Below, piece after piece: positions 48,156 through 62,157 of a stretch of DNA of 64,000 nucleotides. The stretch covers positions 157,357-221,356 of IMG/VR virus record IMGVR_UViG_3300027770_001980; one strand, written 5' to 3'. The first letter of the stretch is position 1; each line of letters begins with the position of its first letter. The notes below the pieces were generated by a model, which saw nothing but the letters and a program-made list of their open reading frames with translations, searched no databases and was not told the origin of the DNA. The translations under genes and the position numbers were made by a program.

Positions 48156-49632
48156 AAAAGAGAAGAAACCAAACTATAATGCAGATATGCAGAAACTATA
48201 TCTGGAGATGTTTCTTTCAGATGCGGAGACATTTGTAAGATGTCAGAACATATTTGATCCACTTAACTTTGATCAAAGATATCAAGATACTGCGGAATTT
48301 ATTACCAAATATGTTGATGACTATAAGGTCATGCCCGAAGCCAGTATTGTAAATGCTAACTGCAAAATGGATCTACAACCAGTTCAGTTGGCCAGAGAAA
48401 ACTATGATTGGCTTATGGATGAGTTTGAGAACTTCAGCAGGCACAAAGGACTTGAACGTGCGATCGTGGCCAGTGCTGACTTACTTGAAGTAGGTGATTA
48501 TGGTCCGGTAGAGAAACTGATCAAAGATGCGATCCAAATTAGTTTAAACAAGGACATGGGCACTGATTACTTTGAAGATCCCAGAGCACGTCTAAGCAAA
48601 CTCAAAGATGGTAATGGACAAGTTAGTACAGGATGGCCCAGCATTGATAAGAAACTATACGGTGGATTCAATCGTGGTGAACTGAATATCTTCTGTGCAG
48701 GATCCGGCGGAGGTAAGAGTTTATTCTTAGCAAACTTGGGTGTGAACTGGGCACTTGCAGGTATGAATGTATTGTATCTTACATTCGAGTTGAGCGAGGG
48801 CCTTGTGGCTATGCGTTTGGACAGTATGATGACAGGTATCACAACACGCGAGATCTTTAAGAATCTTGATGAGGTTGAACTCAAGGTCAAAGTATTGGGT
48901 AAGAAGTCCGGAAATCTACAAGTCAAATATATGCCAAGTGGTAAGAACTGTAATGACATTCGTGCTTACTTGAAAGAGTATCAAGTTAAGAAAGGCTGTA
49001 AACCCGATGTTATCCTAATCGATTATTTGGACTTGATGATGCCATTAAGCGTGAAGATTAGTCCAAGTGACTTGTTTGTCAAAGACAAATATGTCAGTGA
49101 AGAAATACGTAATTTAGCAATGGAAACACAATGTGTTACTGTAACTGCAAGTCAGTTAAATCGTAGTGCAGTTGAAGAGATTGAATTTGATCACAGTCAT
49201 ATCTCGGGCGGTCTGAGTAAGATTATGACAGCAGATAATGTGATCGGTATCTTTACAAGTCGTGCTATGAAAGAACGCGGACGTTATCAAATACAGTTCA
49301 TGAAAACTCGTAGCAGTAGCGGAGTTGGACAAAAGGTTGAATTAGAATTTAATATTGATACATTACGAATCACAGACGCAGGGGATGACGATACTGCCAG
49401 TTTTAATCAGGGTGGGGGTCAATCATCTAACAGCAGCGGTGGTAGTTCTATGATGTCTGGATTTAAACGTACCAGCACAGTGAGCACCAGCACAGACGAA
49501 CCTGTTAATACTAAATGGGAAAGAGCAACACCCGTTGAGGGATTTGATTTGAGTAAACCTCAAGTCAAGGGTGTTAAGGCAGTCAGCGATATTAGATCAA
49601 TGCTGGCTAAAATGAACGAAGAAAAAGATTAA
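48148..49632 (+). CDS. gp41: Replicative helicase (gp41/DnaB-like)
   Basis: AGSGGGKS, TFELSE, ILIDYLDLM, TASQLNR and KTRSS. Confidence 0.93.
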   Translation: MNKKEKKPNYNADMQKLYLEMFLSDAETFVRCQNIFDPLNFDQRYQDTAEFITKYVDDYKVMPEASIVNANCKMDLQPVQLARENYDWLMDEFENFSRHKGLERAIVASADLLEVGDYGPVEKLIKDAIQISLNKDMGTDYFEDPRARLSKLKDGNGQVSTGWPSIDKKLYGGFNRGELNIFCAGSGGGKSLFLANLGVNWALAGMNVLYLTFELSEGLVAMRLDSMMTGITTREIFKNLDEVELKVKVLGKKSGNLQVKYMPSGKNCNDIRAYLKEYQVKKGCKPDVILIDYLDLMMPLSVKISPSDLFVKDKYVSEEIRNLAMETQCVTVTASQLNRSAVEEIEFDHSHISGGLSKIMTADNVIGIFTSRAMKERGRYQIQFMKTRSSSGVGQKVELEFNIDTLRITDAGDDDTASFNQGGGQSSNSSGGSSMMSGFKRTSTVSTSTDEPVNTKWERATPVEGFDLSKPQVKGVKAVSDIRSMLAKMNEEKD

Positions 49633-50189
49633 AACCAACTGGCTACTTGTTCTCTGCTGGATTCAGCAATAACTCTGTGCCATTGATCTATGTCTGTGTA
49701 ACCGAATAAAGTTTCAGGTTCTGCACGGGTAAATGACCAACTGTGATTAATGGTCCAGGGATCTTCGCCTAACACTTCACCATCTAAATGTCTTGGTAGC
49801 CAACGCACAAAACCTGCGATGGCTCTGAAATATGACGGCCCTTCATTGTTACTGATAGCACTTAATACAGACAAGTCACTACTGATTCCAATTTGATCAG
49901 TTACTTTATTTGTAGTTGGGCTGAACCAATCTAACGTATGTATAACGTGTATTCTATTTGTAGACTCTGGACCACCATTGTATAGTGGTTGATCGTTAGG
50001 CATTGTCAATCCTACATTTCTCATAACACTATCAAACGTGACATTACTGACATATGGTTTGTTAATTTGCAGACCAATGGCACCGGCACTGTCATGATCT
50101 ATTACCAATACTGTACTTCTACGTAGAACGGAATCCGTTCTTTTAGGATGTGCCGCTAACAGATGTCCTGTATAATTTTGCTCTATCAT
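49629..50189 (-). CDS. YqgE/AlgH (DUF179) family protein
   Basis: GHLLAAHP...DHDSAGAIGLQINKP...GGP...FRAIAGFVRW...LDGE...W. Confidence 0.85.
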   Translation of the reverse strand: MIEQNYTGHLLAAHPKRTDSVLRRSTVLVIDHDSAGAIGLQINKPYVSNVTFDSVMRNVGLTMPNDQPLYNGGPESTNRIHVIHTLDWFSPTTNKVTDQIGISSDLSVLSAISNNEGPSYFRAIAGFVRWLPRHLDGEVLGEDPWTINHSWSFTRAEPETLFGYTDIDQWHRVIAESSREQVASWF

Positions 50190-50194
50190 ACATC

Positions 50195-50211
50195 TATTTA
50201 ACCGATAAATA
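50195..50211. promoter_or_regulatory. Back-to-back TAAATA boxes (minus 50195-50200, plus 50206-50211)
   Basis: Located between the divergent YqgE-like and nucleotidyltransferase genes. Confidence 0.55.
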
Positions 50212-50218
50212 CTTTTAT

Positions 50219-50905
50219 ATGGCTATACTTGACTATAATTTGGGGTTTGAACCTCATGACCAACTTAATCCTAAAATCTGGCAGGGCGATCGTCTGCTGC
50301 CCGATGTTGAATCAGCATTGATTAAAATTGCACGAGATTTTAAGAAGTTTATAGATGTTCCATTTGATGTAGTAGATGTACGTATTACCGGCGGTCAGGT
50401 ATCATATTTCTATACTGATAAAAGCGATTTGGATTTACACTTGATTGCAGATTATAGCAGTGTGGACTGTGATAGAGAAGCAGCAGAACTATTTGATGCC
50501 AAGCGATTGCTTTATAAGAACAAATTTGATATCACCGTTAAAGGTATACCTGTAGAACTGTATGTGGAAGATTTAGATCACCCTGCGGTTAGTGCTGCTT
50601 ATAGCATACAACAAAGACGGTGGCTTTCTCGGCCAAAACAGAATGTAGGGCCATTTGATGTGGATAACATTGAACATATGACTCAAGTATGGGACACTTT
50701 AATTCGACACAGTTTAGCGTCAAAAGATGCCAATACTGCCAAAAAAATAATGAATTTATTGCGGAAATTTCGTCAATTGGGCCTCAAAACCACCGGAGAA
50801 TATTCCACAGCTAATCTGGTATATAAAACACTACGTAACAGTGATATTATTCGACAATTACAAAATTTCATTGATCAAGCACATGATCAAAATTTAAGTA
50901 TCTAA
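50219..50905 (+). CDS. Pol-beta superfamily nucleotidyltransferase; start refined to ATG 50219
   Basis: DVRITGGQVSY...SDLDLHL and VELYVED motifs; C-terminal GEYSTANLVYKTLR. Confidence 0.75.
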   Translation: MAILDYNLGFEPHDQLNPKIWQGDRLLPDVESALIKIARDFKKFIDVPFDVVDVRITGGQVSYFYTDKSDLDLHLIADYSSVDCDREAAELFDAKRLLYKNKFDITVKGIPVELYVEDLDHPAVSAAYSIQQRRWLSRPKQNVGPFDVDNIEHMTQVWDTLIRHSLASKDANTAKKIMNLLRKFRQLGLKTTGEYSTANLVYKTLRNSDIIRQLQNFIDQAHDQNLSI

Positions 50906-51598
50906 TTATTTTCTGTAGAATTCCGGTGGGTGCGGATTCATATAATGGTCAAGATTACCTGTATTATACATATTGTAGAACCTCGCACCATTTCTACCTA
51001 ACCACATTTCCGGACCGTTCACGGGCGTTACATCGGTCCAGGGATTCTCATAATGTAGAGACGAGGGCAGGGGTATCTTATTGCATTTCCTAATGAAACT
51101 GGATTTTAACCAATATACATTACCACTGAAATGATTGTTGTCACGTAGTAAACTACCAACAGCATCATATCCTTCATCTAACTTGGTGATACAATCTCGC
51201 CAATTTTCAATGGTCCAATAATCCATGATCCATCTCCAATGTTTGCAAGGAATGGCCCTATCTGAAAATCCTTCAACATAAGAAACACCTTTTTGATGTG
51301 TATATAGAGCATAGAAATCTTCAGTTGTATTATCAGCGGTTTCTTTCATTAAACGATTGGTTGTGATCTCTGCATCTCGGGGATCTGATGTTTTAAAAAT
51401 CCAATTTATATTTGAATAATGTCGATATTGTTCTTTAAGATCATCAAAACTGTTTTTATTGTAATGGCAATTGATGTTTAATTCTGCAACATCTAACAAA
51501 CCACTAACTTTCATTTTTGTAATTTGTTCTTCAAAAATTAGTTTTGTATGATTCAAATTTAAATCAATCACATGATAAAAAATTTTAAGATGTGCCAT
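50906..51598 (-). CDS. Glycosyltransferase-like/hypothetical protein
   Basis: LYTHQKGVS...YDAVG...HFSGNVYW pattern, inside the GT cluster. Confidence 0.45.
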   Translation of the reverse strand: MAHLKIFYHVIDLNLNHTKLIFEEQITKMKVSGLLDVAELNINCHYNKNSFDDLKEQYRHYSNINWIFKTSDPRDAEITTNRLMKETADNTTEDFYALYTHQKGVSYVEGFSDRAIPCKHWRWIMDYWTIENWRDCITKLDEGYDAVGSLLRDNNHFSGNVYWLKSSFIRKCNKIPLPSSLHYENPWTDVTPVNGPEMWLGRNGARFYNMYNTGNLDHYMNPHPPEFYRK

Positions 51599-51599
51599 A

Positions 51600-52304
51600 T
51601 TATGTAGTCCTGGTTAACACCTCTTGCCAATCCACCATCTTTCCAATCACCCATGTGTCACAGTGAGTTGCATATCCAGGAACGGGCGTGATCAAACCCC
51701 TCGATTCCGATAATGCAGAAAATAATTGTGTATCATGAGTCCAACGATCTTCACCACCGCACCACTGTTGAAATAATGATCGATCTTCTATTAGATATCC
51801 TACACGACTGGCAAATGTCATGGTAGTAGAACCAGTTGTACGCCAATGGCAATCTTCGGAAATAATTAGTTTACACAATCGATCAGCATTACTATCCCAA
51901 TACTTGTCCGGATGATCATATAGGCTTACATACGGACAATTTTGAAGTCCTTGCTCTAATATTATATCAGCACCTTCGTGATGTATGTAATCATCTTCAA
52001 CAAAATATACAATCATATCTTTGGGTAATTGTATTGCTTGGTCAAGTGAATATAGAAATGAACCAGCATTGGATCCAAATGTGGTTCTACGTAAATCCAA
52101 TAGGGGATATAGACTATTGAGTTTATCCCATACTTGGTCATCAACTCCGTCGGCTACAACCGTGATATCATGCTCGTTGAATACCGTGGTAAAGTTTTTT
52201 AAACATTTCCATTTGTCAAACCATTCTGGACGATCTGGCGGAGTACGTGGATTTCCGGCATAGTCCGGCATGATCCTAAAACTAAACCTGTAGTATATCT
52301 TCAT
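51600..52304 (-). CDS. GT-A fold glycosyltransferase
   Basis: ITVVAD, VYFVEDDYIH and STTMTF motifs. Confidence 0.65.
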   Translation of the reverse strand: MKIYYRFSFRIMPDYAGNPRTPPDRPEWFDKWKCLKNFTTVFNEHDITVVADGVDDQVWDKLNSLYPLLDLRRTTFGSNAGSFLYSLDQAIQLPKDMIVYFVEDDYIHHEGADIILEQGLQNCPYVSLYDHPDKYWDSNADRLCKLIISEDCHWRTTGSTTMTFASRVGYLIEDRSLFQQWCGGEDRWTHDTQLFSALSESRGLITPVPGYATHCDTWVIGKMVDWQEVLTRTT

Positions 52305-53169
52305 TTCTTTTATTATGAAAGAATGGTGGTTTTCCGAGATTTACTTCTAAAATACCCCATGGCCAATATTCTTGAACAGTTTTCTTACCGCCTGGCGCAA
52401 TGAAGTCTCTGTACTTACTGATGTTGTTTAAAATAGTTTTGGGAAAATACTCATCGAGAATTACTGGCTCCCAAACTTCATTGGGACGGAAATAATCCCG
52501 ACCTCGAGAGATCATATCAGAAACATTTATCTTATCTACAATTGAGGGAATATTGAGCTCTTGATGGCTAAAACTGTTGATTTTATTTTTAATAAATTCT
52601 TCATTACCTAAGTAACTGAAATGCCACCCTGCATGATGCAATTCAATTTTATTTCGACCAGGAACTTCATCCATTTTGAATCTCATGCTGTTGGGTGCGG
52701 CTTGAAATCCTCTATAGGCTTTACCTCTCCATGGATAATTGTCTGTAACATCCAGATAGTTGTATTTGAAATAGAACATGGGCATCGCTAATCCATAAAA
52801 GGAATAATTGGTATCTCTGATATATTGAAATGCCTCGGCTCTGGTGATTTCATCCATATCACTGATGAGAATCACATCATCATCTGTTAAGTCTTTCCAT
52901 CCTCTTGCTTGTTGATTACGTTGCCATTCTTCATTGACCCAGGCATTGGAATCTGTGGGAGAATTTTCAACTTTGATGTAATCAATTTTATCCATCCATT
53001 GACTATATCTGTCAAGATTCTTTTCCAGATTGAATCCTTTGTATATTCCACTATAGGTCCTGTCACATTCAACTATGACAAACTTGTCTACGTGGTCGTA
53101 GTGCTCTCTTAATCGTAATTCTAAAAGATCATACTCATTTAAGAACATGACCGTATCGTATATTTTCAT
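52282..53169 (-). CDS. GT17-family (beta-1,4-GlcNAc-transferase/MGAT3-like) glycosyltransferase
   Basis: FLNEYDLLELRL...DKFVIVE, EEWQRN, ISDMDEI, GWHFSYLG and SFSHQE. Confidence 0.88.
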   Translation of the reverse strand: MKIYDTVMFLNEYDLLELRLREHYDHVDKFVIVECDRTYSGIYKGFNLEKNLDRYSQWMDKIDYIKVENSPTDSNAWVNEEWQRNQQARGWKDLTDDDVILISDMDEITRAEAFQYIRDTNYSFYGLAMPMFYFKYNYLDVTDNYPWRGKAYRGFQAAPNSMRFKMDEVPGRNKIELHHAGWHFSYLGNEEFIKNKINSFSHQELNIPSIVDKINVSDMISRGRDYFRPNEVWEPVILDEYFPKTILNNISKYRDFIAPGGKKTVQEYWPWGILEVNLGKPPFFHNKRNEDILQV

Positions 53170-53200
53170 TGGTTACCTTTATATTATGCATCGATGACGA

Positions 53201-53243
53201 TATTTATTAATGACTTGTATTGCTGAAAAAATTATAGTATACT
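53201..53243. promoter_or_regulatory. Divergent control region: minus-strand TAAATA (53201-53206) and plus-strand TTGTAT-N17-TATACT (53215-53243)
   Basis: Motifs read directly in the 113 bp gap between the two GT arms. Confidence 0.55.
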
Positions 53244-53282
53244 ATAATTAAAATAAGTAAACAATACAAAAGGAAGTTAATA

Positions 53283-54179
53283 ATGCAGGCACTTTTCACA
53301 GGGGGTTTGGGCGATTTTATTGGAGCCGAATCTTTTATGACCGATCAGGAAAAAGATTCAGTTACTACTATACTTTGGGCAACCAGAAACAGAATTGAAA
53401 TACAAGAGGCTGTGGATCTACAATTGGTATTTCCTAACTTGAAAGATCAAAAGATTATGTTCGACGATTGGGCTACTGAACGTCCTACACGCGATTGGCA
53501 ACCCGGCGATCGTTTTATGAACATAGGCATGAAACACGAACTTAATCTTAAATGCAATTTGGGACTAAGTTCAGAGGAACTTGCGGCAATTAGTGATCAT
53601 AGTTTGGATGCTACACTACAACGTATATTCTCCGGACTTAAATGGCAAAGCAGTAGAACAGCTACACGGGGAAATTGGCCATCTGTAGAATACTTGAATC
53701 TACCCGCTAACTATGTGGTTATACATCCATGGAGCGATGCAGAGATTAACGGTAGAGAATTCAATGACGCCGATTGGGATCAGATTTTCCAATTCTTGGA
53801 TAGAGAGGGTATGTTGGGTGTAGTGGTTAATAAAAGCAATAAACTTCCGCCCTCACACCCGAAATTAATCGATCTTACTAATCAAACTTCTTTAAAAGAA
53901 ACATTTAATGTTATGAGGGGCGCAGCCGCTGCTATACTTTGTGCCAGTAGCTTGGCATGTTTGGCTACTAAAATGTTTTCTAAAGGAGCTATCGTCCTTA
54001 AGGGAGGCTATCCACATATGTTTACAGACTGGGCTACTTATTTTTATCACGGCCCTTTTACTAATCCTAACGATATAATCTATAAAGACCTTGCTATAAT
54101 AAATCCAATTCCAAAAAATACTAACACATACTACAACACTCCTGCTGGGTTGGATCAGGGCTATTTAACTTTATTATAA
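53283..54179 (+). CDS. GT9 (heptosyltransferase-like, GT-B) glycosyltransferase
   Basis: GGLGDFI, YVVIHP and LIDLTNQTSLKE...ASSLACLA. Confidence 0.7.
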   Translation: MQALFTGGLGDFIGAESFMTDQEKDSVTTILWATRNRIEIQEAVDLQLVFPNLKDQKIMFDDWATERPTRDWQPGDRFMNIGMKHELNLKCNLGLSSEELAAISDHSLDATLQRIFSGLKWQSSRTATRGNWPSVEYLNLPANYVVIHPWSDAEINGREFNDADWDQIFQFLDREGMLGVVVNKSNKLPPSHPKLIDLTNQTSLKETFNVMRGAAAAILCASSLACLATKMFSKGAIVLKGGYPHMFTDWATYFYHGPFTNPNDIIYKDLAIINPIPKNTNTYYNTPAGLDQGYLTLL

Positions 54180-54191
54180 GAGAAACAATTT

Positions 54192-54986
54192 ATGACACAA
54201 TTAATATTGGGCGCAGCCTGCGGATATACAACTAAGGAATTGGAACCTTTTGTAAAATCACTACGTAGATACTATCAGGGCGATGCTGTATTAGTGGTAT
54301 TTCCATTGTCTGATAGTGATAGAACCTTTTTTGAACAATATAATATCATTACTTACGAATTGGATCAACCTATTCCTAATCCCAAAGATATACAAACTTA
54401 TAGGTATTACTTCTATAACGAATGTATGGAAAACTTTCCAACCGCAGATCATGTATTGATTATCGATGTTAGAGATGTTATGTTCCAAGACGATCCATTT
54501 AAATATCCATTGACCCATCAATTGGAATTTTATCAGGAACCTTGCCTATATAAAAATTGCCCTGCTAATGCACCTTGGATGCATGGCATGTATTCTCAAT
54601 CGGGATACGACTTGGTTAAAGATGAATATATCCTATGTGGTGGTAGTACTATCGGAACATTCCAAGGCATGTCATTATATATTAATGCTATGATTAAAGA
54701 AATTGAAAGAATACAAGCAACTGGTAGACATATACATTCCGGTGAAGATCAACCTATACATAATTTCTTGGTTTATAATCAAACTTTCCCCGATTGGATT
54801 ACACATCCTAATGCAGAACATGCTATTGCTACTCTTCATCATCAACATCAATTTACCTTTAATCGTGCGGGACAATTGCTAAACAGTCGCAATGAACCAA
54901 TTCCTATTGTACATCAATGGGATCGTACTAATGCAGTTAAAGCGGTTGCCGAACGCACCGCCCTGGAAGGCCCTTTGAAATATTGA
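54192..54986 (+). CDS. GT-A fold glycosyltransferase-like protein
   Basis: VLIIDVRDVMFQDDPF (DxxD), CGGSTIG, EDQ and HQWDR. Confidence 0.6.
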   Translation: MTQLILGAACGYTTKELEPFVKSLRRYYQGDAVLVVFPLSDSDRTFFEQYNIITYELDQPIPNPKDIQTYRYYFYNECMENFPTADHVLIIDVRDVMFQDDPFKYPLTHQLEFYQEPCLYKNCPANAPWMHGMYSQSGYDLVKDEYILCGGSTIGTFQGMSLYINAMIKEIERIQATGRHIHSGEDQPIHNFLVYNQTFPDWITHPNAEHAIATLHHQHQFTFNRAGQLLNSRNEPIPIVHQWDRTNAVKAVAERTALEGPLKY

Positions 54987-54990
54987 ACTT

Positions 54991-55848
54991 ATGAAATCTA
55001 ATGAACTAACTATTGCCATTGTCGATACTGCTTTTTATCCTTTGGCAACCCGCAGTATAGAAACAACTCTGGAGATAACCAACGCGAAACGAGTTTTGGT
55101 CTTGAGCGACCGAGACTTCTTTCCCGGCTCTGATTTTGTTAAAATTGATACCATTAATGATAAAAGAGACTACAGTCGGTTGATGCTTAAAGAATTGGGT
55201 CGACATATTACTACCGATCACTTTATGGTTATCCAATACGATGGATTGCCTATCGATACAAGTCAATGGCAAGACGACTTTATGAAATACGACTATATCG
55301 GTGCTACTTGGCCTTGGGGACCCTATGATCAACGTGTGGGCAATGGTGGCTTTAGTATACGTAGTCGTCGTCTACATGAACTGTGCTTACAGGACGAAAT
55401 GGTGTTTGATCCCCCTGGGTATGGTGATAATAACTATATGGAGGATACTCATATATGTCAACTCTATCGTGTTTGGCTTGAGACACAAGGCATTAGATAT
55501 GCTCCTGCTGATTTGGCCAATCAATTTTCAGCCGAATGTCCCGGCGGTCGGTTTGATACATACGGTTTCCATGGCACCCTGTGTTTACCACACTACTTGT
55601 CAGACGACCATATGAAATTCTATATTGATAATCTACCTAACGACTTCTTCTTAGACGAATCTCAAACTCGTATCGTGTTTGGACTGTTTTTAGCTGAACG
55701 CTGGGAGAATATGGAAATGATGATGGACCGCGGTATGACTTTGGATCCCGACTTCTTATCTCGTGTATTCGATTTGTTTAAGAAGGAATCTGGACTTTGG
55801 CCTGGTATGACACTACACGACCTTGAACAGGTTTTGATCAACTATTAG
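54991..55848 (+). CDS. DUF5672-like (putative glycosyltransferase) protein
   Basis: FMVIQYDG, YDYIGATW, VGNGGFSIRS, EDTHIC and YGFHG. Confidence 0.75.
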   Translation: MKSNELTIAIVDTAFYPLATRSIETTLEITNAKRVLVLSDRDFFPGSDFVKIDTINDKRDYSRLMLKELGRHITTDHFMVIQYDGLPIDTSQWQDDFMKYDYIGATWPWGPYDQRVGNGGFSIRSRRLHELCLQDEMVFDPPGYGDNNYMEDTHICQLYRVWLETQGIRYAPADLANQFSAECPGGRFDTYGFHGTLCLPHYLSDDHMKFYIDNLPNDFFLDESQTRIVFGLFLAERWENMEMMMDRGMTLDPDFLSRVFDLFKKESGLWPGMTLHDLEQVLINY

Positions 55849-55927
55849 ATGAGTAGTTAATAACTAAACCCACATACTTAAATAAAATTGGTAGAATTAT
55901 ATCTACTTTTAAAAAGGAGTCTATTTT

Positions 55928-56158
55928 ATGGACAATGTAATGACAAAGGCTAATGGCCTTTTATCTGGTATAATCGATATTGGCATCAAACTGATTGCCG
56001 CTGGTGTGATCCTGCAAATCCTATTTGGTGCTGCTGTTCCATTCTTGGCTATCGATGTAACCGCAAGCGTGATTAAATTTGTGGCGGCTTTGGGCAGTCA
56101 AGGTTTGGTCGGTCTGACTGCATTGGCAGTTATCTATTGGTCCTTCACTAAGAAGTAA
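55928..56158 (+). CDS. Small membrane protein in its own transcription unit
   Basis: 76 aa with two to three hydrophobic segments; TAAATA at 55879-55884, AAGGAG RBS and a downstream terminator. Confidence 0.7.
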   Translation: MDNVMTKANGLLSGIIDIGIKLIAAGVILQILFGAAVPFLAIDVTASVIKFVAALGSQGLVGLTALAVIYWSFTKK

Positions 56159-56176
56159 ACTCCAATAGTACAAACT

Positions 56177-56205
56177 AAAAAGCCCCAACTTACGGGGCTT
56201 TTTTT
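56177..56205. terminator. Bidirectional intrinsic terminator
   Basis: aaaaagcccc-aacttac-ggggcttttttt between convergent genes. Confidence 0.88.
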
Positions 56206-56290: not shown

Positions 56291-56848
56291 TTATAATATC
56301 TCAACTAACAATCTACGTGTATCCAAAGCATGTTGCTCACGCTGTTCTAACTTTAACTTATATATGGTTCGCAATAACTCTCGCGCACTATCTACAGTTA
56401 AATCTACCTTGATAGCCTCCCCTCCAGCAGCTGACCACTGCTGACAATTGTCAGACCTGTCATCTACCAGTATATCACCAGCACTACAGTGACGCCACTT
56501 GTCTTCACTATAGGGCCCAAAATGTACTGGAATGTCGGGAAAATATCTTCCTGCCCACTCTATCTTATCATGAAATACCCAGGGCACATCATTGTTGTGC
56601 GGTATGGCCGTTAAGAACAATAACTCCCACCCTAAATCATCTCTGAACCAGCGAGCTACACTTACTAACTCTTCTGCTCCTGGCATTAAGGGCAAATCTC
56701 GAAATATACGACCATTGCTACGTAATCGATCCCAATCCGCTGGCTTATAACGCTGTTTTGGATCTGTTGAATCCGATCCTAATATCATACGTGCATTGGT
56801 ACGCCAATCTGCTACGACTCCATCCATATCTAAGTAAAGTTTATTCAT
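56291..56848 (-). CDS. HAD-family 5'(3')-deoxyribonucleotidase-like protein
   Basis: LYLDMDGVVADW, FLTA, DKIEW and ILVDDRSDN. Confidence 0.85.
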   Translation of the reverse strand: MNKLYLDMDGVVADWRTNARMILGSDSTDPKQRYKPADWDRLRSNGRIFRDLPLMPGAEELVSVARWFRDDLGWELLFLTAIPHNNDVPWVFHDKIEWAGRYFPDIPVHFGPYSEDKWRHCSAGDILVDDRSDNCQQWSAAGGEAIKVDLTVDSARELLRTIYKLKLEQREQHALDTRRLLVEIL

Positions 56849-57993: not shown

Positions 57994-58022
57994 CATACAT
58001 GCTTGCTATGCTTGCATGTATG
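57994..58022. repeat. 9 bp inverted-repeat hairpin
   Basis: catacatgc / gcatgtatg. Confidence 0.75.
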
Positions 58023-58060
58023 TGTGTGACCAGCCGTACCCCACCCCGACCGGCCACACC

Positions 58061-58330
58061 TCACCTGTCATCAGTCTCAACCTCATCCAGGATCTCTATA
58101 GCCAATGCGGTATCACCGTAGACATCGTATCCTTCTGATATCAACTCCTCCACAGCCTCTGACATCAACTGTTCTACCAAGCGTACACGAGCGGCTTGCC
58201 GTGTATCCTTCTTGCGTACCCGGCCGCTGCCTACCCGGTAGACCAGTGCGTAGTGATCACTACAGTAACTCTTGCCTTCTAGTGCAGGGTGTGTACAGCC
58301 AGCACCGTTGCCAATGTATGTACAAGTCAT
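58061..58330 (-). CDS. Small Cys/His zinc-binding hypothetical protein
   Basis: CTY...C...SYCSDHYALVY. Confidence 0.5.
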   Translation of the reverse strand: MTCTYIGNGAGCTHPALEGKSYCSDHYALVYRVGSGRVRKKDTRQAARVRLVEQLMSEAVEELISEGYDVYGDTALAIEILDEVETDDR

Positions 58331-58584
58331 TCGTCGTTCTCCGCTTGTACTGCCTTGACAGTCCGGATTAGGTCTGTACGCTGGGCTTCAGTCATGTCCG
58401 CAATGATCTCCATACCGTGGACCACACCCGTTTCAAAGCCGTCTTTATAGTGTATGTGATTGCTGGCCAACAGCAGGGCCAGCACACACCAGAACTCCCA
58501 CGTGTCGATAGGGTGTCCAATGACTAATAGGACGAGTCCCAGGCTTAGGCTAACGGCAATGCGTTGTAGTGTATCGTGCATCAT
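58327..58584 (-). CDS. Small membrane protein
   Basis: Two N-terminal hydrophobic segments; coupled overlaps with both neighbours. Confidence 0.5.
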   Translation of the reverse strand: MMHDTLQRIAVSLSLGLVLLVIGHPIDTWEFWCVLALLLASNHIHYKDGFETGVVHGMEIIADMTEAQRTDLIRTVKAVQAENDE

Positions 58585-59468
58585 GCTCTCCGCATACAGG
58601 TACCTGCAGCCATCTTAGTCCAGTTAGCGGGAAACTTCTTACGCAGATCAGCCAGCTTCAACACCATACGCAAGCTGAGCTCACGCAGGTTCTTCTGGTT
58701 CTTAACCACGTAGTCAATCAGTTCATCCTCTACACAGGCTTCGAATGCATAGCGTTCCAGCATAGGAGTCTTGCCGGGTTGTGGGTGCTTGATCACCTGC
58801 CGGATACGTAGGATCTTCTCGCGATCGGTATCCATCTGCAGATCGATGTAGTGGCAGCGGCTCTCCAGGGCATCCAAGTGTCCACGCAGTTTCTTACTAC
58901 GGACATGTTCGAACTTGATGTTGGTGATGAAGATAGCGGCACCCTTGAACTCAAAGCGATCTGGAATGCCTTCACTACGCAGGATGCGGCTGTCTGTGTT
59001 CCAGCTGATGAAGCGACGCTCTGAGCTGTCCAGGGCACCTTTCAGGGTGTTCAGTGATTGTTCTTCCATCAAGATGTCGTCACAGTCGTCGAACACCACA
59101 ACGTTGCCTTCGCCTGAGAACTCGTAGAGTTTAGCGTAAAGACCGATTGAGCTCATAGCACCCTTGACCACTTCGAACTTGGGTTTGCGTTCGGCCAGGA
59201 CATTGAACAGATTAGCCTTTTGCAGTACTGCCTCAACGCCAAAGGATTTGCCCACACCAGGAGGGCCCGATACGATCATAGCACGGACATCGCCGGTGCG
59301 GACTGCTTCGGTCATCATGTCCAGGATATCAAAGCGATCTCGCAGGCGGCTATAGATCTCGTCGTCTGTCTCCTTGGCCACTGACTCGTGTGTGCGTTTG
59401 ATGGCCGCCTCGTCGAATTCCAGGATGTTAGTGCCCGCGCTGGGTTTACGTGATGCCTTTGTTGCCAT
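58581..59468 (-). CDS. AAA+-type P-loop ATPase
   Basis: GPPGVGKS (Walker A), VVVFDDCD (Walker B), FITN and ALESRC (Arg finger). Confidence 0.85.
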   Translation of the reverse strand: MATKASRKPSAGTNILEFDEAAIKRTHESVAKETDDEIYSRLRDRFDILDMMTEAVRTGDVRAMIVSGPPGVGKSFGVEAVLQKANLFNVLAERKPKFEVVKGAMSSIGLYAKLYEFSGEGNVVVFDDCDDILMEEQSLNTLKGALDSSERRFISWNTDSRILRSEGIPDRFEFKGAAIFITNIKFEHVRSKKLRGHLDALESRCHYIDLQMDTDREKILRIRQVIKHPQPGKTPMLERYAFEACVEDELIDYVVKNQKNLRELSLRMVLKLADLRKKFPANWTKMAAGTCMRRA

Positions 59469-59494
59469 AGTGTTCCTCGGTTGTTTAAGTGTGT

Positions 59495-59523
59495 ATTATA
59501 ACAGGGGATTGCTCCCCTGTCAA
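59495..59523 (-). promoter_or_regulatory. Early promoter P1: TTGACA-N17-TATAAT; spacer overlapped by the palindrome acagggg/cccctgt
   Basis: Read directly; followed by ACACAC and a GAGG RBS. Confidence 0.9.
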
Positions 59524-59527
59524 GTAT

Positions 59528-59857
59528 TTAATCTGCCCGGCTACCAGCGTAGGCTTGGGTGATGCCCATCTTGCGGAGCACTTCGGCATAGGCCTGGGCA
59601 CCTGCTTCCTTAACGCTCATGCTCTGTGTACCGTGTCCGGATGGGTTCCACAGTTGGAGACCGCCACCGTATGCAGGTTTGAAGCCCACCCGCTTCAATG
59701 CACGGCCCAGTTTGGTGCTGCCTTTTTCGTAGACCGTAACCCAAGCAAAGCCACAATACCAGTCTTCGCCATGCTGGGCGATGTAGTTGTTGGCGGCTTC
59801 TGCGGCGGCTTGGGCGGCAGTGTTATGGATGGATTCGATGTTGTCGATTGCGATCAT
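59528..59857 (-). CDS. Early hypothetical protein
   Basis: 109 aa with YCGFAWV; GGAG RBS after P2. Confidence 0.65.
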   Translation of the reverse strand: MIAIDNIESIHNTAAQAAAEAANNYIAQHGEDWYCGFAWVTVYEKGSTKLGRALKRVGFKPAYGGGLQLWNPSGHGTQSMSVKEAGAQAYAEVLRKMGITQAYAGSRAD

Positions 59858-59887
59858 AGTGTGCTCCAGTGCGTTGTTGATGTGTGT

Positions 59888-59916
59888 ATTATACTGCGGA
59901 TCTGCCGGATCGTCAA
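59888..59916 (-). promoter_or_regulatory. Early promoter P2: TTGACG-N17-TATAAT
   Basis: Read directly; ACACAC leader. Confidence 0.85.
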
Positions 59917-59917
59917 C

Positions 59918-60100
59918 CTATTTCTTCCCAACTTCAGTTGCGACTTGAGGCTTGATCATCTGTACGCAGGTGCCCTTAAATCCCTGCCGTTGTAGATCTT
60001 TGAGGGCCACTTGGCAGGTGGCATCCTCTTGGAACTGCCCCACATAGACCATACTGGGGGAGGTGACGCCCAATCCTACGAGTACAATAGCCCAAAACAT
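59918..60100 (-). CDS. Small early protein with a hydrophobic N-terminus
   Basis: 60 aa ORF. Confidence 0.5.
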   Translation of the reverse strand: MFWAIVLVGLGVTSPSMVYVGQFQEDATCQVALKDLQRQGFKGTCVQMIKPQVATEVGKK

Positions 60101-60102
60101 AG

Positions 60103-60306
60103 TTAGTCCTTCTTAGTGACGGTGGTTTTGAACAGGATGCCAAACAGGAACTGTAGTCCCCAAGCCTGTAGCCAACCGATTTCCTTGACTCCATCTACTG
60201 CGGGCACAAGGCATTGATTCCACAGTTCCATCACAGGCCAAGCCAGTAGGAAGGAGAACAGGACCAGGACTACCAGTAGGCCAATGAATGCGGTGATGTA
60301 TTGCAT
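60103..60306 (-). CDS. Small early membrane protein
   Basis: 67 aa with two hydrophobic segments; AAGGA RBS. Confidence 0.6.
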   Translation of the reverse strand: MQYITAFIGLLVVLVLFSFLLAWPVMELWNQCLVPAVDGVKEIGWLQAWGLQFLFGILFKTTVTKKD

Positions 60307-60315
60307 GATGATTCC

Positions 60316-60534
60316 TTAGAGTGTGAATTGTTTCAGGACGCTTTGGGCTTCGTCCACTTCAGTGACTTCGTCCACAAAGGCCAGGATCATCATCTGGATC
60401 AGTGAGCGGCACTCCGTGCGTTCGGCCTTGGGCAAGGTAGCGATGAATGCTTCCACAGCATCGTATTCCTCCAAAGTCCACATGATGTCGCAAAGGGCCT
60501 TTTGCTTAGGGTTCAGTCCAGCGATAGTGATCAT
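60316..60534 (-). CDS. Small early hypothetical protein
   Basis: 72 aa with a coupled start. Confidence 0.55.
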   Translation of the reverse strand: MITIAGLNPKQKALCDIMWTLEEYDAVEAFIATLPKAERTECRSLIQMMILAFVDEVTEVDEAQSVLKQFTL

Positions 60535-60719
60535 TTTGTAGCCTCGTTAGCATAAGAAGCGCCCAGCGCCATGAGTGCAATGCCTACCAGTGCAAAGGTG
60601 CCCAAGTAGACTCCGTCGTAGGTAGCAAGGTCCAAGCACTGCTCGAAACCGCCCATTGTACCTAACAGCAAGATCAATCCTGTGTACAGACAGAATAGGG
60701 CTTTTTGGTGTAGTGTCAT
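60531..60719 (-). CDS. Small early membrane protein
   Basis: 62 aa with two hydrophobic segments; AAGGA RBS after P3. Confidence 0.55.
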   Translation of the reverse strand: MTLHQKALFCLYTGLILLLGTMGGFEQCLDLATYDGVYLGTFALVGIALMALGASYANEATK

Positions 60720-60746
60720 ATCGTGTTCCTTTGTTGCTATGTGTGT

Positions 60747-60775
60747 ATTATAGCAGGGTTCTTACACCCTGTCAA
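60747..60775 (-). promoter_or_regulatory. Early promoter P3: TTGACA-N17-TATAAT with a cagggt/accctg inverted repeat
   Basis: Read directly. Confidence 0.9.
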
Positions 60776-60777
60776 CC

Positions 60778-61023
60778 TCATAGATTCTCTCCTGTTTCAG
60801 TGTCGATCCGTCCAGTCACAAAGGCAAAGGATGTAGCAGGTGCTGGGTGATTGTAGAAGTGCTCACGGTTGTGAACTGCCGCATATCCATATGCCTCATC
60901 TTCGGCCGCTCCTGGATATGCCTCACCTTCAACCGCAAACTCTCGCTCGCTTAGGACCTTGTAGAAGTCGGGGCGGGCAGTCTCAGGATTGACCCGGTAT
61001 ACTTGAACATTCCAAACAATCAT
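60778..61023 (-). CDS. Early hypothetical protein
   Basis: 81 aa; AAGGAG RBS after P4. Confidence 0.6.
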   Translation of the reverse strand: MIVWNVQVYRVNPETARPDFYKVLSEREFAVEGEAYPGAAEDEAYGYAAVHNREHFYNHPAPATSFAFVTGRIDTETGENL

Positions 61024-61053
61024 TTCGTGCTCCTTATTAGTGTCTATGTGTGT

Positions 61054-61082
61054 ATTATAACAGGGTTTTTAGTCTCTGTCAA
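61054..61082 (-). promoter_or_regulatory. Early promoter P4: TTGACA-N17-TATAAT
   Basis: Read directly. Confidence 0.9.
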
Positions 61083-61461
61083 CCAACTCACGACCCAGGC
61101 TCACGCCTTCAGAATAGTAGCCGTTGCTCTCACCAAACCAACGCACATCCACATAGCCCCGGCGGGTAGCGAACTTGTAGAAGGTCCAAGTCACGCTATC
61201 GTGTTCTTCCTCGTTGAAGTCCACAGGTGTTTCGCCCGACACCTCTTCGGCGATCAACAAAGGCTCACCCACCAAGTCCTGCAGGTCACCGCAGATGTCC
61301 TCGATGCTCACATGCTCGCAACAATCCTGCGAGTGGAAGAACACGAAGCGTTCGGTTGCATTCTCGAACACCATCTCATCGCCATTTTGAGTTACCGAAG
61401 TGAACACCTGGCCCACCATGCTTTCGATCTTTGCTTCTGCGTTGTAATCCATGTATCCCAT
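61069..61461 (-). CDS. Early acidic hypothetical protein
   Basis: HSQDCCEHV...WTFYKF...GESNGYYSE; AAGGAG RBS after P5. Confidence 0.65.
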   Translation of the reverse strand: MGYMDYNAEAKIESMVGQVFTSVTQNGDEMVFENATERFVFFHSQDCCEHVSIEDICGDLQDLVGEPLLIAEEVSGETPVDFNEEEHDSVTWTFYKFATRRGYVDVRWFGESNGYYSEGVSLGRELVDRD

Positions 61462-61496
61462 TTCGTGCTCCTTAGTGTGTTGCTGTCTATGTGTGT

Positions 61497-61525
61497 ATTA
61501 TAGCACCGTTTGGATGATCAGTCAA
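61497..61525 (-). promoter_or_regulatory. Early promoter P5: TTGACT-N17-TATAAT
   Basis: Read directly. Confidence 0.85.
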
Positions 61526-61703
61526 CCGGTTTAAAGGTTCTTCCTTTAAGATCCAGCGTGATAGGCTTGCGGAACTTTACTACACGATCTGACCCTACAG
61601 GGATGTAGGCCAGGGCATTGGCACTGCGAGCACCGGGACGGGTCTTGAAGATGTAGATGTGGTTGGGTGCGTCCCAACGGGTGGTCTCTTCCAGGATGAT
61701 CAT
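61518..61703 (-). CDS. Small early protein
   Basis: 61 aa with a coupled start. Confidence 0.55.
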   Translation of the reverse strand: MIILEETTRWDAPNHIYIFKTRPGARSANALAYIPVGSDRVVKFRKPITLDLKGRTFKPVD

Positions 61704-61912: not shown

Positions 61913-61938
61913 GTGCTGCTCCTTGTTGCGATGTGTGT

Positions 61939-62133: not shown

Positions 62134-62157
62134 ATGCTCTTTAGTGTCTATGCGTGT

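What the first reader, a model, noticed from the sequence alone, without database searches (positions are those of the whole stretch)
50906..55848. Six-gene divergent glycosyltransferase island with apparently split early/late control
Seen: the minus arm holds a GT17-like, a GT-A and a GT-like gene. The plus arm holds a GT9-like, a GT-A-like and a DUF5672-like gene. The gap contains a late-type TAAATA for the minus arm and TTGTAT-N17-TATACT for the plus arm. Established: GT17 (MGAT3-like) enzymes are best known from eukaryotic N-glycan processing, and GT9 enzymes build LPS core. Inference: two glycosylation programmes, an early host-surface (LPS) remodelling arm for superinfection exclusion and a late arm that glycosylates virion proteins or DNA. 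This would be a multi-enzyme phage glycan pathway.
Basis: partly seen in the sequence, partly recalled or inferred. Interest (0 to 1): 0.65.

Follow-up and report, generated by a model that had tools for sequence, protein, structure and literature searches.

The report
Glycan-building gene island in a lake jumbo phage
A large uncultured freshwater phage carries six adjacent sugar-transferase-type genes, part of a shuffled glycan-building gene set common in big aquatic viruses; it probably decorates the phage's own particle, and nothing shows that one half remodels the host surface.

Summary
The six ORFs and both gap motifs are at the stated coordinates.

**Family calls**
- GT17: Pfam, 1.3e-29.
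- DUF5672: Pfam, 1e-16.
- "GT9-like" gene: confident GT-B model whose nearest structures are WaaF, WaaC and TibC. It has no GT9 Pfam hit.
- Plus-arm "GT-A-like" gene: GT6-like fold.
- Minus-arm "GT-A" gene: weakly GT2-like.
- Sixth gene: DUF8361, fused to GT17 in giant viruses.

**Genome context.** The window ends a 221-kb record of a freshwater jumbo myovirus related to PA5oct and Atu_ph07. The phage encodes a T4 gp55-like sigma.

**Promoter signals**
- ATAAATA is the genome's top upstream 7-mer, and 31 of its 53 copies are intergenic. One copy lies 32 nt before the GT17 start, so a late signal for the minus arm is credible.
- TTGTAT-N17-TATACT is weak alone (8/12), but relatives conserve it in place. 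It is followed by ATAAGTA, which aligns with ATAAATA in two relatives.

**Against two programmes**
- Relatives move these genes between arms.
- In two relatives both arms carry late motifs.

No transporter or ligase was found, and no hydroxymethyl-base genes.

**Verdict.** This is most likely one mosaic cytoplasmic glycan pathway, probably acting on virion proteins. That target is inferred. It is a new member of a known kind.

The parts
50906..51598 (-). P0001, 230 aa. DUF8361 protein, last gene of the minus arm. Soluble.
   Evidence: ORF. No hit in the local Pfam or PHROGs copies. ESM Atlas: feature score 0.98 to DUF8361 (PF27674) clusters. Its Atlas model has TM 0.91 to a DUF8361 cluster, 0.85 to a bacterial cluster named 'Glycosyltransferase', and 0.82 to giant-virus GT17+DUF8361 fusions. 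No TM segment.
51600..52304 (-). P0002, 234 aa. GT2-like GT-A glycosyltransferase with an invariant E103-D-D105 acidic motif. Its start overlaps the GT17 stop by 23 nt.
   Evidence: More than 2,400 metagenomic homologues, some named glycosyltransferase by JGI. 12 of 27 family members hit PF00535, best E 4.8e-4. The family profile hits TarS (E 0.003) and SunS (E 0.013) across the acidic motif. Atlas features score 0.98 to a GT2 cluster.
52282..53169 (-). P0003, 295 aa. GT17-family glycosyltransferase, first gene of the minus arm. Has an SDMDE motif and no membrane anchor.
   Evidence: PF04724, E 1.3e-29, 103.8 bits against a cut-off of 26. Sequence. No TM segment. A paralogue at 33% identity lies at genome 9873-10670.
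53170..53282 (.). 113-nt divergent intergenic gap holding the promoter signals of both arms.
53201..53207 (-). ATAAATA, a T4-type late promoter motif (context AATAAATA), 32 nt upstream of the GT17 ATG.
   Evidence: It is the top enriched upstream 7-mer, 20 seen against 0.87 expected. 31 of 53 genomic copies lie in the 5.8% of the genome that is intergenic, and 23 sit 5-60 nt before a same-strand start. A gp55-like sigma is encoded at genome 131831-132742.
53215..53243 (+). TTGTAT-N17-TATACT, a sigma-70-like promoter with a weak -35 and an A-tract spacer.
   Evidence: 8 of 12 to consensus, not above chance alone. The same place in relatives holds TTGTAT-17-TATAAT, TTGCGA-17-TACACT, TTGACC-17-TACACT and TTGACA-17-TACACT or TATACT, with a conserved AAAAA(A)TT spacer.
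53253..53259 (+). ATAAGTA, a conserved element 9 nt after the -10 hexamer and 24 nt before the ATG. Probably a late-promoter variant.
   Evidence: The composite TAYACT-N(5-12)-ATAAGTA occurs once in the 221-kb genome but recurs at the heads of glyco operons in L006, L011, L012 (twice), L013 and L014. It aligns with ATAAATA of L013 and L016. ATAAGTA on its own is only mildly intergenic, 4 of 28 copies.
53283..54179 (+). P0004, 298 aa. GT-B glycosyltransferase with a GT9 (heptosyltransferase)-like fold and invariant G10-D11.
   Evidence: AlphaFold2 pLDDT 90.4. Foldseek: TibC 1.4e-5, Veillonella GT9, WaaC, WaaF. VIA-align Z: 13.1 WaaF, 12.9 GT9, 12.6 WaaC, 11.8 TibC, against 11.4 for UDP-GlcNAc 2-epimerases. 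The nearest Atlas clusters that carry a Pfam family all carry PF01075. No Pfam hit and no PDB sequence hit. More than 100 homologues at 57-87% identity.
54192..54986 (+). P0005, 264 aa. GT-A glycosyltransferase with a GT6-like fold and invariant D92, R94 and D95.
   Evidence: AlphaFold2 pLDDT 93.7. Foldseek PDB: alpha-1,3-galactosyltransferase, ABO GTA/GTB and BoGT6a, E about 1e-11, TM 0.60-0.63. BFVD: uncultured phages, Tupanvirus, mimivirus GT6 and cyanophage glycosyltransferases. No Pfam hit. Alignment.
54991..55848 (+). P0006, 285 aa. DUF5672 protein, almost always adjacent to the GT9-like gene in relatives.
   Evidence: PF18922, E 1.1e-16, 61.4 bits against 24.4. Adjacent to the P0004 homologue in 7 of 9 related loci (L003, L010, L011, L013-L016) and elsewhere in an eighth, L012. 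The depositors' note on the cyanophage RN05-S homologue reads 'glyco_tranf_GTA_type domain'. No PDB or profile link found here.
55928..56158 (+). 76-aa protein with three hydrophobic segments, downstream of the plus arm and before the terminator. It has its own TTAAATA at about 55879-55885. Not conserved in relatives' islands, so possibly not part of the pathway.
   Evidence: Absent after the P6 homologue in L010.
56177..56203 (.). GC-rich hairpin with T-runs on both strands. A bidirectional terminator closing the plus arm.

Best explanation
The island is one module of a mosaic, cytoplasmic glycan-assembly pathway of a freshwater jumbo myovirus.

**Enzymes.** The island encodes six soluble proteins: GT17, a GT2-like GT-A, DUF8361, a GT9-like GT-B, a GT6-like GT-A and DUF5672. 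They would add different sugars stepwise. Donors would come from host pools and from phage genes encoded elsewhere in the record:
- a HAD-phosphatase/nucleotidyltransferase fusion;
- an FkbM methyltransferase;
- a further GT2;
- a B12-radical-SAM enzyme;
- two NDP-sugar dehydratase/epimerases;
- a second GT17.

**Control.** The minus arm (GT17, GT2-like, DUF8361) is a tight operon read from a gp55-type late promoter. The plus arm is read from a clade-conserved composite promoter, made of a sigma-70-like -35/-10 followed by a late-like ATAAGTA. It probably runs on to the hairpin at 56177-56203.

**Target.** The most likely acceptor is the phage's own virion proteins, glycosylated in the cytoplasm during morphogenesis. 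This is what mycobacteriophages, chloroviruses and mimiviruses do.

**Shown:** the gene content, the folds, the motifs, their conservation and the mosaicism.
**Inferred:** the timing, the donors and the acceptor.
For: **Enzyme identities:**

**Soluble and cytoplasmic**
- None of the six has a TM segment.
- No polytopic protein with 8 or more TM segments (Wzx, Wzy, WaaL or GtrC type) is found in the 221 kb.

**Late signal**
- ATAAATA enrichment and positioning.
- A gp55 homologue, E 2.4e-8.
- An ATAAATA copy 21 nt before the first gene of the operon that holds the second GT17.
- In L013 and L016 both arms are headed by ATAAATA.

**One shuffled pathway**
- Relatives hold the same families in different orders and strands.
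- Sugar-nucleotide genes are interleaved with them.
- The own-genome HAD/NTP-transferase is 85% identical to the gene that sits next to the GT9-like gene in L006.

**Protein-acceptor precedents**
- TibC is Foldseek's top hit for P0004.
- SunS is among the PDB hits for the P0002 profile.
- The same families occur in giant viruses, including GT17+DUF8361 fusions and GT6.

Virion glycosylation by phage enzymes is established in mycobacteriophages: Freeman et al. 2023, as cited in PMC12619734.
Against: - No acceptor was identified and there are no expression data. The phage is uncultured and no RNA run holds it.
- Promoter class is inferred from motifs only.
- P0006 and P0001 are not shown to be glycosyltransferases.
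- The record is only about 62% complete, so missing genes such as transporters or base-modifying enzymes cannot be excluded.
- The island sits among replication and nucleotide-metabolism genes rather than structural genes.
- Structural margins for GT9 over other GT-B families are small, Z 13.1 against 11.4.
Confidence: 0.45

Rival explanations
1. Host-envelope remodelling: the enzymes, or at least the plus arm, modify LPS core or another cell-surface glycan of the infected cell. This would block superinfection or alter recognition.
For: - P0004 has a GT9-like fold, and WaaF and WaaC are the top VIA-align hits.
- The P0002 profile hits TarS, a wall-teichoic-acid glycosyltransferase.
- The plus arm has a conserved sigma-70-like promoter.
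- Comparable glycosyltransferase and epimerase islands in cyanophages are usually annotated as cell-wall synthesis and modification (PMC12801897).
Against: - No membrane-bound partner (GtrA/B/C, Wzx, Wzy or WaaL type) is found in 221 kb.
- Late-type motifs head the minus arm, and in two relatives both arms. Late is a poor time to rebuild an envelope.
- The GT9-like gene fails the GT9 Pfam model.
- Its Foldseek top hit is a protein heptosyltransferase.
- The genes move between arms in relatives.
Confidence: 0.2
2. DNA hypermodification: the transferases build a glycan on a modified base of phage DNA to evade restriction.
For: - The island lies next to primase, DnaB-like helicase and an NT5C-like nucleotidase.
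- Phage GT-A and GT-B enzymes, together with HAD-type and nucleotidyltransferase partners, put heptose and other sugars on 5hmC (bioRxiv 10.1101/2023.12.21.572611).
- The genome has a HAD/NTP-transferase fusion.
Against: - No Tet/JBP dioxygenase is found.
- The only thymidylate-synthase-family gene scores 349 bits to the Pfam model, as a canonical ThyA would, and lies about 110 kb from the island.
- DNA glycosyltransferases must act early, but late-type motifs head the minus arm.
- The GT-B fold resembles GT9. T4 beta-glucosyltransferase is not among the 50 listed Foldseek or VIA-align hits.
- The genome instead carries deazaguanine-type genes, PTPS and a radical-SAM enzyme.
- Caveat: 38% of the genome is missing.
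Confidence: 0.1
3. One reading: two independent programmes, an early plus arm acting on LPS and a late minus arm acting on virion or DNA.
For: In this window, and in L006 and the P4-upstream gap of L012, the minus arm has ATAAATA and the plus arm has a sigma-70-like promoter.
Against: - Arm membership is not conserved: GT17 is on the P4 strand in 7 of 7 relatives that hold it.
- L013 and L016 have ATAAATA on both arms.
- The plus arm's ATAAGTA aligns with a late motif.
- The phage's clear early promoters are near-perfect TTGACA-17-TATAAT, unlike the 8-of-12 site here.
Confidence: 0.1

Closest known systems
Glycosyltransferase and sugar-nucleotide islands of large aquatic myoviruses (cyanophages S-B05, S-B43, S-H68, RN05-S and S-SRM01; P-SSM2 and S-SCSM1 type 'cell wall synthesis and modification' clusters)
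   Same: - They hold the same modules. GT17 and a DUF5672 homologue lie within about 3 kb in S-B05, S-B43, S-H68, RN05-S and RB11-B. DUF8361 and the GT2-like gene lie together in S-SRM01.
- They are interleaved with epimerases, dehydratases, FkbM methyltransferases and nucleotidyltransferases, as in this phage's relatives.
- The function is untested there too.
   Different: - Identity is only 23-36%.
- The host is not known to be a cyanobacterium.
- This phage's backbone is PA5oct/Atu_ph07-like.
- The GT9-like and GT6-like members found no cultured-phage match (for P0004; P0005 matched cyanophage proteins only at fold level).
Mycobacteriophage virion O-glycosylation (Freeman et al. 2023, cited in PMC12619734)
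   Same: Phage-encoded soluble glycosyltransferases would act in the cytoplasm on capsid and tail proteins. This is the proposed mode of action here.
   Different: - Those systems have one or two glycosyltransferases next to structural genes, in siphoviruses of actinobacteria.
- Here there are six or more genes, other families and no identified acceptor.
- The link is by analogy only.
Giant-virus glycosylation machinery (chlorovirus capsid glycans, mimivirus fibrils, prasinovirus GT17)
   Same: - GT17+DUF8361 fusions and GT6-like proteins occur in Nucleocytoviricota.
- Both use virus-encoded cytoplasmic multi-enzyme glycan synthesis, with methyltransferases.
   Different: The virus realm and hosts differ. 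Homology is at family or fold level only.
GT9 heptosyltransferases (WaaC, WaaF; TibC/BAHT protein heptosyltransferases)
   Same: - GT-B fold, and these are its nearest structures.
- An invariant Gly-Asp pair near the N-terminus (residues 10-11 in P0004, 12-13 in E. coli WaaC), as in E. coli GT9 enzymes.
- In L006 the homologue neighbours a HAD/nucleotidyltransferase fusion and an FkbM methyltransferase, and viral GT9-FkbM fusion proteins exist.
   Different: - No PF01075 hit, and the profile comparison gave 2.4% probability.
- It is shorter, at 298 aa.
- In that low-confidence alignment the D(T/S)G motif of GT9 faces CASS.
- Donor and acceptor are unknown.
T4-type late transcription (gp55 sigma, TATAAATA)
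   Same: - A gp55 homologue is present.
- An ATAAATA core is strongly enriched, typically about 20-30 nt before gene starts.
   Different: - The first base of the octamer is variable.
- gp33 and gp45 coactivators were not sought.
- Timing is untested.

Membership tests
GT17 (PF04724, MGAT3-like) | Match to the family HMM above the curated threshold | tested here: met
   P0003: 103.8 bits against a cut-off of 26, E 1.3e-29, covering profile positions 74-299 of 348.
GT17 (PF04724, MGAT3-like) | Acidic D-x-D type motif | tested here: met
   SDMDE at residues 103-107 of P0003. Its correspondence to the GnT-III motif is from memory and was not aligned here.
GT17 (PF04724, MGAT3-like) | Type II membrane anchor and lumenal N-glycan acceptor, as in eukaryotic MGAT3 | tested here: not met
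   No hydrophobic segment; maximum 19-residue Kyte-Doolittle mean is 0.5. It is a soluble viral or bacterial-type member, so the acceptor need not be an N-glycan.
GT9 (PF01075, heptosyltransferases) | Match to the family HMM | tested here: not met
   No PF01075 hit for P0004 even at E up to 10. hhalign against E. coli WaaC, WaaF, WaaQ and WaaU gave 2.4% probability.
GT9 (PF01075, heptosyltransferases) | GT-B fold with GT9 enzymes as nearest structures | tested here: met
   Foldseek: TibC 1.4e-5, GT9 3tov, WaaC, WaaF. VIA-align Z 13.1-11.8, with epimerases at 11.4. Atlas TM 0.59-0.63 to PF01075 clusters.
GT9 (PF01075, heptosyltransferases) | Catalytic Gly-Asp after strand 1, and nucleotide-heptose-binding Lys and Asp in the C-domain | tested here: inconclusive
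   G10-D11 are invariant in 28 homologues, and G12-D13 are invariant in four E. coli GT9 enzymes. The N-domains were not aligned by hhalign. The C-domain alignment is of low confidence and puts CASS opposite VDTG.
GT6 (alpha-1,3-Gal/GalNAc transferases) | GT-A fold closest to GT6 structures | tested here: met
   P0005 model, pLDDT 93.7. The best hits are GT6: alpha3GalT, GTA/GTB and BoGT6a, E about 1e-11, TM 0.60-0.63.
GT6 (alpha-1,3-Gal/GalNAc transferases) | Match to the family HMM | tested here: not met
   No Pfam family at E up to 10. Identity to GT6 structures is 12-18%.
GT2 (PF00535) | Match to the family HMM, with a D-x-D region aligned to solved GT2 enzymes | tested here: inconclusive
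   P0002 itself has no hit. 12 of 27 family members hit PF00535, best E 4.8e-4. The profile hits TarS at 0.003 and SunS at 0.013 over the VEDDY region.
DUF5672 (PF18922) | Match to the family HMM above threshold | tested here: met
   P0006: 61.4 bits against 24.4. Whether the family is a glycosyltransferase was not shown: no PDB or profile link was found, and there is only a depositor's note of a GT-A-type domain.
DUF8361 (PF27674) | Match to the family model | tested here: inconclusive
   The model is not in the local Pfam copy. Atlas feature score is 0.98 and structural TM 0.91 to DUF8361 clusters.
T4-type late promoter regulon | gp55-like sigma encoded, and a TATAAATA-like motif enriched just upstream of genes | tested here: met
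   gp55 homologue, E 2.4e-8. ATAAATA: 31 of 53 copies intergenic and 23 well placed. One copy lies 32 nt before GT17.
T4-type late promoter regulon | Late timing of the transcripts | not testable with these tools
   No RNA run holds the stretch.
Seroconversion systems (GtrABC or O-antigen-modifying phage glycosyltransferases) | Membrane-embedded flippase and polytopic glycosyltransferase | tested here: not met
   None of the six has a TM segment, and no protein with 8 or more TM segments is found in 221 kb. The record is 62% complete.
Phage DNA glycosylation pathways (T4 alpha/beta-GT; 5mYOX- or ThyS-linked glycosyltransferases) | A hydroxymethyl-pyrimidine-forming enzyme, usually clustered with the glycosyltransferase | tested here: not met
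   No Tet_JBP. The single ThyA-family gene scores 349 bits, lies about 110 kb away and looks canonical. Only 62% of the genome could be searched.

The most novel reading that the evidence does not exclude
Freshwater jumbo phages of this clade use a shuffled set of ten or more enzymes to build a complex glycan on their own virions. The set includes a GT9-like transferase next to a HAD/nucleotidyltransferase fusion, FkbM methyltransferases and a B12-radical-SAM enzyme. The glycan may be methylated and may contain heptose. The operons would share a clade-specific composite promoter (sigma-70-like -35/-10, A-tract spacer, ATAAGTA) that couples them to both pre-late and late transcription. This would be the first multi-enzyme virion-glycan pathway in a phage related to isolates that infect Gram-negative bacteria. 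It would also give a function to the glycosyltransferase islands of large aquatic phages.
Probability: 0.25. Interest if true: 0.7.

Novelty: new member of a known kind. Interest (0 to 1): 0.4.

Why it matters
Large aquatic phages and giant viruses commonly carry clusters of glycosyltransferase and sugar-nucleotide genes whose target has rarely been tested in phages.

This island adds three usable facts:
- The genes are soluble and lack export partners.
- At least one arm sits behind a promoter motif that this genome uses with a gp55-type late sigma.
- The same modules exist in cultured cyanophages, where virion glycostaining and mass spectrometry are feasible.

If virion glycosylation is confirmed, it would bear on phage-host recognition, grazing and immune evasion in lakes. 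It would also supply new soluble GT17-, GT9- and GT6-like enzymes. If not confirmed, the island remains an ordinary example of a known type of accessory region.

Tried and rejected
**Searches that found nothing**
- PHROGs and NCBIfam gave nothing for any of the six proteins.
- Megablast of the island against 50,697 phage records found nothing.
- P0004 has no sequence-level link to PDB, either alone or as a profile.
- Profile searches and hhalign gave no link between DUF5672 or DUF8361 and the GT-A families here or PDB. The cyanovirin hits for DUF8361 are short and taken as spurious.
- No tRNA and no Rfam family was found in the window region.

**Ideas tested and dropped**
- I suspected the GC-rich end of the window (after 58 kb) was a chimeric join, because an identical 23-kb contig ends at about 58,060. 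I rejected this because relative L010 keeps the same gene order into the AAA ATPase at 74% identity.
- ATAAGTA as a general promoter class of this genome: only 4 of 28 copies are intergenic.
- A MotA-type middle promoter reading of TTGCTG in the gap: the spacing does not fit well, and no MotA was sought. I did not pursue it.

**Attempts that gave no usable test**
- RNA evidence: the first try at the run search failed. The second found only DNA runs. Laying their contigs confirmed presence in several lake metagenomes but says nothing about expression.

**Tools left unused**
- The large representative-protein search and the complex predictor. No claim here rests on absence of relatives or on binding.

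Full report
**1. What is there**

The six ORFs are exactly as described. Three lie on the minus strand: 50906-51598, 51600-52304 and 52282-53169. Three lie on the plus strand: 53283-54179, 54192-54986 and 54991-55848.

The two sets are separated by a 113-nt gap.
- The minus arm is a tight operon. The GT17 stop overlaps the next start by 23 nt, and the gene after that follows with a 1-nt gap.
- The plus-arm genes are 12 and 4 nt apart.
- A 76-aa hydrophobic protein follows, at 55928-56158.
- A hairpin with T-runs on both strands lies at 56177-56203.

**2. The genome**

The window is the last 64 kb of a 221,356-bp IMG/VR virus record estimated to be 62% complete.

The window also encodes a tail sheath, tube, large terminase, gp32-like SSB, UvsX-like recombinase, primase and a DnaB-like helicase. 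The helicase is 52% identical to that of Pseudomonas phage PA5oct and 51% to Agrobacterium phage Atu_ph07. This is therefore a jumbo myovirus of the group that keeps a T4-like core.

Near-identical DNA occurs in freshwater and lake metagenomes from several studies. No RNA run holds it.

**3. The proteins**

- **P0003** is a GT17 family member: 103.8 bits, E 1.3e-29.
- **P0006** carries DUF5672: 61.4 bits.
- The other four have no Pfam, PHROGs or NCBIfam match.
- **P0004.** I folded it with 28 homologues, giving pLDDT 90.4. It is a GT-B enzyme.
  - Foldseek's best hits are TibC, a protein heptosyltransferase, at 1.4e-5, then Veillonella GT9, WaaC and WaaF.
  - VIA-align gives Z 13.1-11.8 for these, against 11.4 for UDP-GlcNAc 2-epimerases.
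  - The nearest ESM Atlas clusters that carry a Pfam family all carry PF01075. Most are viral, and many are fused to FkbM methyltransferase, GT1 or WbsX domains.
  - Family membership at sequence level fails.
  - An invariant Gly-Asp pair lies near the N-terminus (residues 10-11), close to where E. coli GT9 enzymes have theirs at residues 12-13.
- **P0005** (pLDDT 93.7) is a GT-A enzyme closest to GT6 structures, E about 1e-11 and TM 0.60-0.63. It has viral look-alikes in uncultured phages, Tupanvirus, mimiviruses and cyanophages.
- **P0002** belongs to a family of more than 2,400 metagenomic proteins. That family is weakly but consistently GT2-like.
  - 12 of 27 members hit PF00535.
  - The family profile hits TarS and SunS across the VEDDY motif.
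  - Atlas features point to a GT2 cluster.
- **P0001** is DUF8361. Its Atlas model resembles a bacterial cluster named 'Glycosyltransferase'. The domain is fused to GT17 in giant viruses, and to GT34-type domains in phages.

None of the six has a membrane segment.

For the sixth they are only a lead.

**4. The island in relatives**

P0004 has more than 100 homologues at 57-87% identity, on contigs of up to 343 kb. I examined nine related loci.

- The GT9-like and DUF5672 genes are adjacent in seven of them, and both are present but apart in an eighth.
- GT17 is often duplicated. The GT2-like gene and one or two DUF8361 genes are usually present. The GT6-like gene is rarer.
- Other genes are interleaved with these:
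  - NDP-sugar epimerases, directly upstream of the GT9-like gene in four loci;
  - a HAD/nucleotidyltransferase fusion;
  - FkbM and other methyltransferases;
  - further GT2 genes.
- Order and strand vary. GT17 is on the same strand as the GT9-like gene in all seven relatives that hold it, whereas it is on the opposite strand in the window. In L015 the GT2-like gene is on that strand too.

The divergent six-gene layout is thus one arrangement of a shuffled gene pool. It is not a conserved pair of units.

**5. The rest of the pathway in this genome**

Several related genes lie elsewhere in the record.
- The first 5 kb of the record encode a B12-radical-SAM enzyme, a GT2, a HAD/nucleotidyltransferase fusion, an FkbM methyltransferase and a 151-aa protein.
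  - The GT2 is 72% identical to an island gene of L003.
  - The HAD/nucleotidyltransferase fusion is 85% identical to the gene next to the GT9-like gene in L006.
  - The 151-aa protein is shared with L013.
- A second GT17, at 33% identity, lies at 9873-10670.
- Two NDP-sugar dehydratase/epimerases lie at about 43 and 89 kb.

The phage therefore has at least eight transferase-type genes plus sugar-activating and sugar-tailoring enzymes.

**6. Regulatory signals**

I called 272 genes crudely in the 221 kb and asked which 7-mers are enriched in upstream gaps.

*Late-type motif*
- ATAAATA is first, with 20 seen against 0.87 expected.
- 31 of its 53 genomic copies lie in the 5.8% of the genome that is intergenic.
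- 23 copies sit 5-60 nt before a same-strand start, typically 18-32 nt.
- The genome encodes a homologue of T4 gp55, the late sigma, at E 2.4e-8.
- The copy at 53201-53207 on the minus strand is 32 nt before the GT17 ATG.
- A late-type promoter for the minus arm is therefore well founded as a motif-level inference.

*Early-type promoters*
- The phage's clear sigma-70 promoters are near-perfect TTGACA-17-TATAAT.
- About 20 intergenic sites score 11-12 of 12, and most lie in the first 100 kb.

*Conservation of the plus-arm site*
- Relatives with a divergent gap carry the same architecture in the same place.
  - It has a TTG-type -35: TTGTAT, TTGCGA, TTGACC or TTGACA.
  - It has an AAAAA(A)TT spacer, then TAYACT or TATAAT.
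  - ATAAGTA follows 7-10 nt later.
  - This is shown.
- This composite occurs once in the whole 221-kb genome. It marks glyco operons in five relatives.
- In L013 and L016 the ATAAGTA column holds ATAAATA, and the opposite arm also has ATAAATA.
- In the window, ATAAGTA ends 24 nt before the ATG, which is the usual late-promoter distance.

My reading is that the plus arm has a conserved host-sigma-type promoter followed by a late-like element. It is probably transcribed before and during the late phase. No expression data could be obtained to test this.

**7. What the glycan is put on**

This step is inferred. I favour the phage's own virion proteins (about 0.45) for four reasons.
- The signals are late-type.
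- All the enzymes are soluble, and no Wzx, Wzy, WaaL or Gtr-type membrane partner is found in the assembled 62%.
- The nearest relatives include protein or peptide glycosyltransferases, TibC and SunS.
- The same families occur in giant viruses. As established outside this work, those viruses make their capsid and fibril glycans with their own cytoplasmic enzymes.

Host-envelope remodelling (about 0.2) is the usual annotation for such islands in cyanophages. It fits the GT9- and TarS-like folds but not the timing signals or the lack of membrane partners.

DNA glycosylation (about 0.1) is suggested by the replication-gene neighbourhood and by the precedents. Against it:
- there is no Tet/JBP enzyme;
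- the single ThyA-family gene looks canonical and is distant from the island;
- late-type signals head the minus arm.

The genome instead has deazaguanine-type genes, as reported for PA5oct.

**8. Comparison with what is known**

Multi-glycosyltransferase islands with sugar-nucleotide genes are annotated in cultured cyanomyoviruses, and these share modules with this island.
- GT17 and a DUF5672 homologue lie within about 3 kb in S-B05, S-B43, S-H68, RN05-S and RB11-B.
- DUF8361 and the GT2-like gene lie together in S-SRM01.
- Glycosyltransferases are also core genes of another aquatic jumbo-phage lineage (PMC12619734).

The finding is therefore a new member of a known kind. The parts that appear new are the clade-specific composite promoter and the motif-based link to gp55-type late transcription.

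**9. Verdict**

- Interest is moderate (0.4).

No other genetic code was used.

Noticed in passing
G000:C1:283-5011 (locus L026), outside the window: A second glyco cluster sits at the other end of the contig: B12-binding radical SAM, GT2, HAD+NTP-transferase fusion, FkbM methyltransferase and a 151-aa protein. Three of these are 67-85% identical to genes that lie inside or next to the island in relatives. If the contig ends are close in the real genome, the two clusters would be about 10 kb apart.
   Followed up: partly
window 58000-64000: GC content rises from about 0.38 to about 0.50. The region has short ORFs on both strands and two perfect TTGACA-17-TATAAT promoters on the minus strand, at 60747 and 63176. 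It is not a chimera: L010 keeps the order into the AAA ATPase (58581-59468) at 74% identity. The cause of the composition shift is unexplained.
   Followed up: partly
window 55836-56200: Summed contig depth in lake metagenomes jumps 10- to 30-fold here, to 184-282 against about 9 in run X2, over the 76-aa three-TM protein gene (55928-56158). This suggests a sequence shared by many other phages or organisms. No tRNA or Rfam family is there.
   Followed up: partly
window 33824-33850 and 34572-34598: Two ATAAATA sites, upstream of the gene at 33885 and of the gp32-like SSB gene at 34671, are each followed by the same AACTGTGTATA. They lie unusually far (55 and 93 nt) from the starts. This may be a separate regulatory element.
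   Followed up: no
G000:C1:42043-42549 and 89922-90827: A PTPS (QueD-like) gene and a radical-SAM gene suggest 7-deazaguanine DNA modification, as proposed for the related phage PA5oct.
   Followed up: no
L011:12356-15434, L014:10679-16808, L016:10543-12491: Relatives carry arrays of up to 24 tRNA genes within about 1-3 kb downstream of their glyco islands. L003 and L011 also have a tRNA-Arg(TCT) inside the island. This window has no tRNA gene at all.
   Followed up: partly
L009 (IMGVR_UViG_3300010885_028554, 23,462 bp): A second contig from the same sample encodes identical proteins across window positions 46312 to about 57840, and the locus ends at about 58,060. It is probably a redundant assembly of the same phage.
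   Followed up: partly
G000:C1:131743-132742: The gp55-like sigma gene is itself preceded by both an ATAAATA and a TTGACA-16-TAAAAT promoter.
   Followed up: no
window 49629-50189 and 56291-56848: The minus-strand genes near the island are an AlgH-like (DUF179) protein, 716 nt before it, and an NT5C-like 5'-nucleotidase, 442 nt after it. The gene that abuts the island at 50150-50905 has a weak poly(A)-polymerase-like match and belongs to phrog_36119.
   Followed up: no
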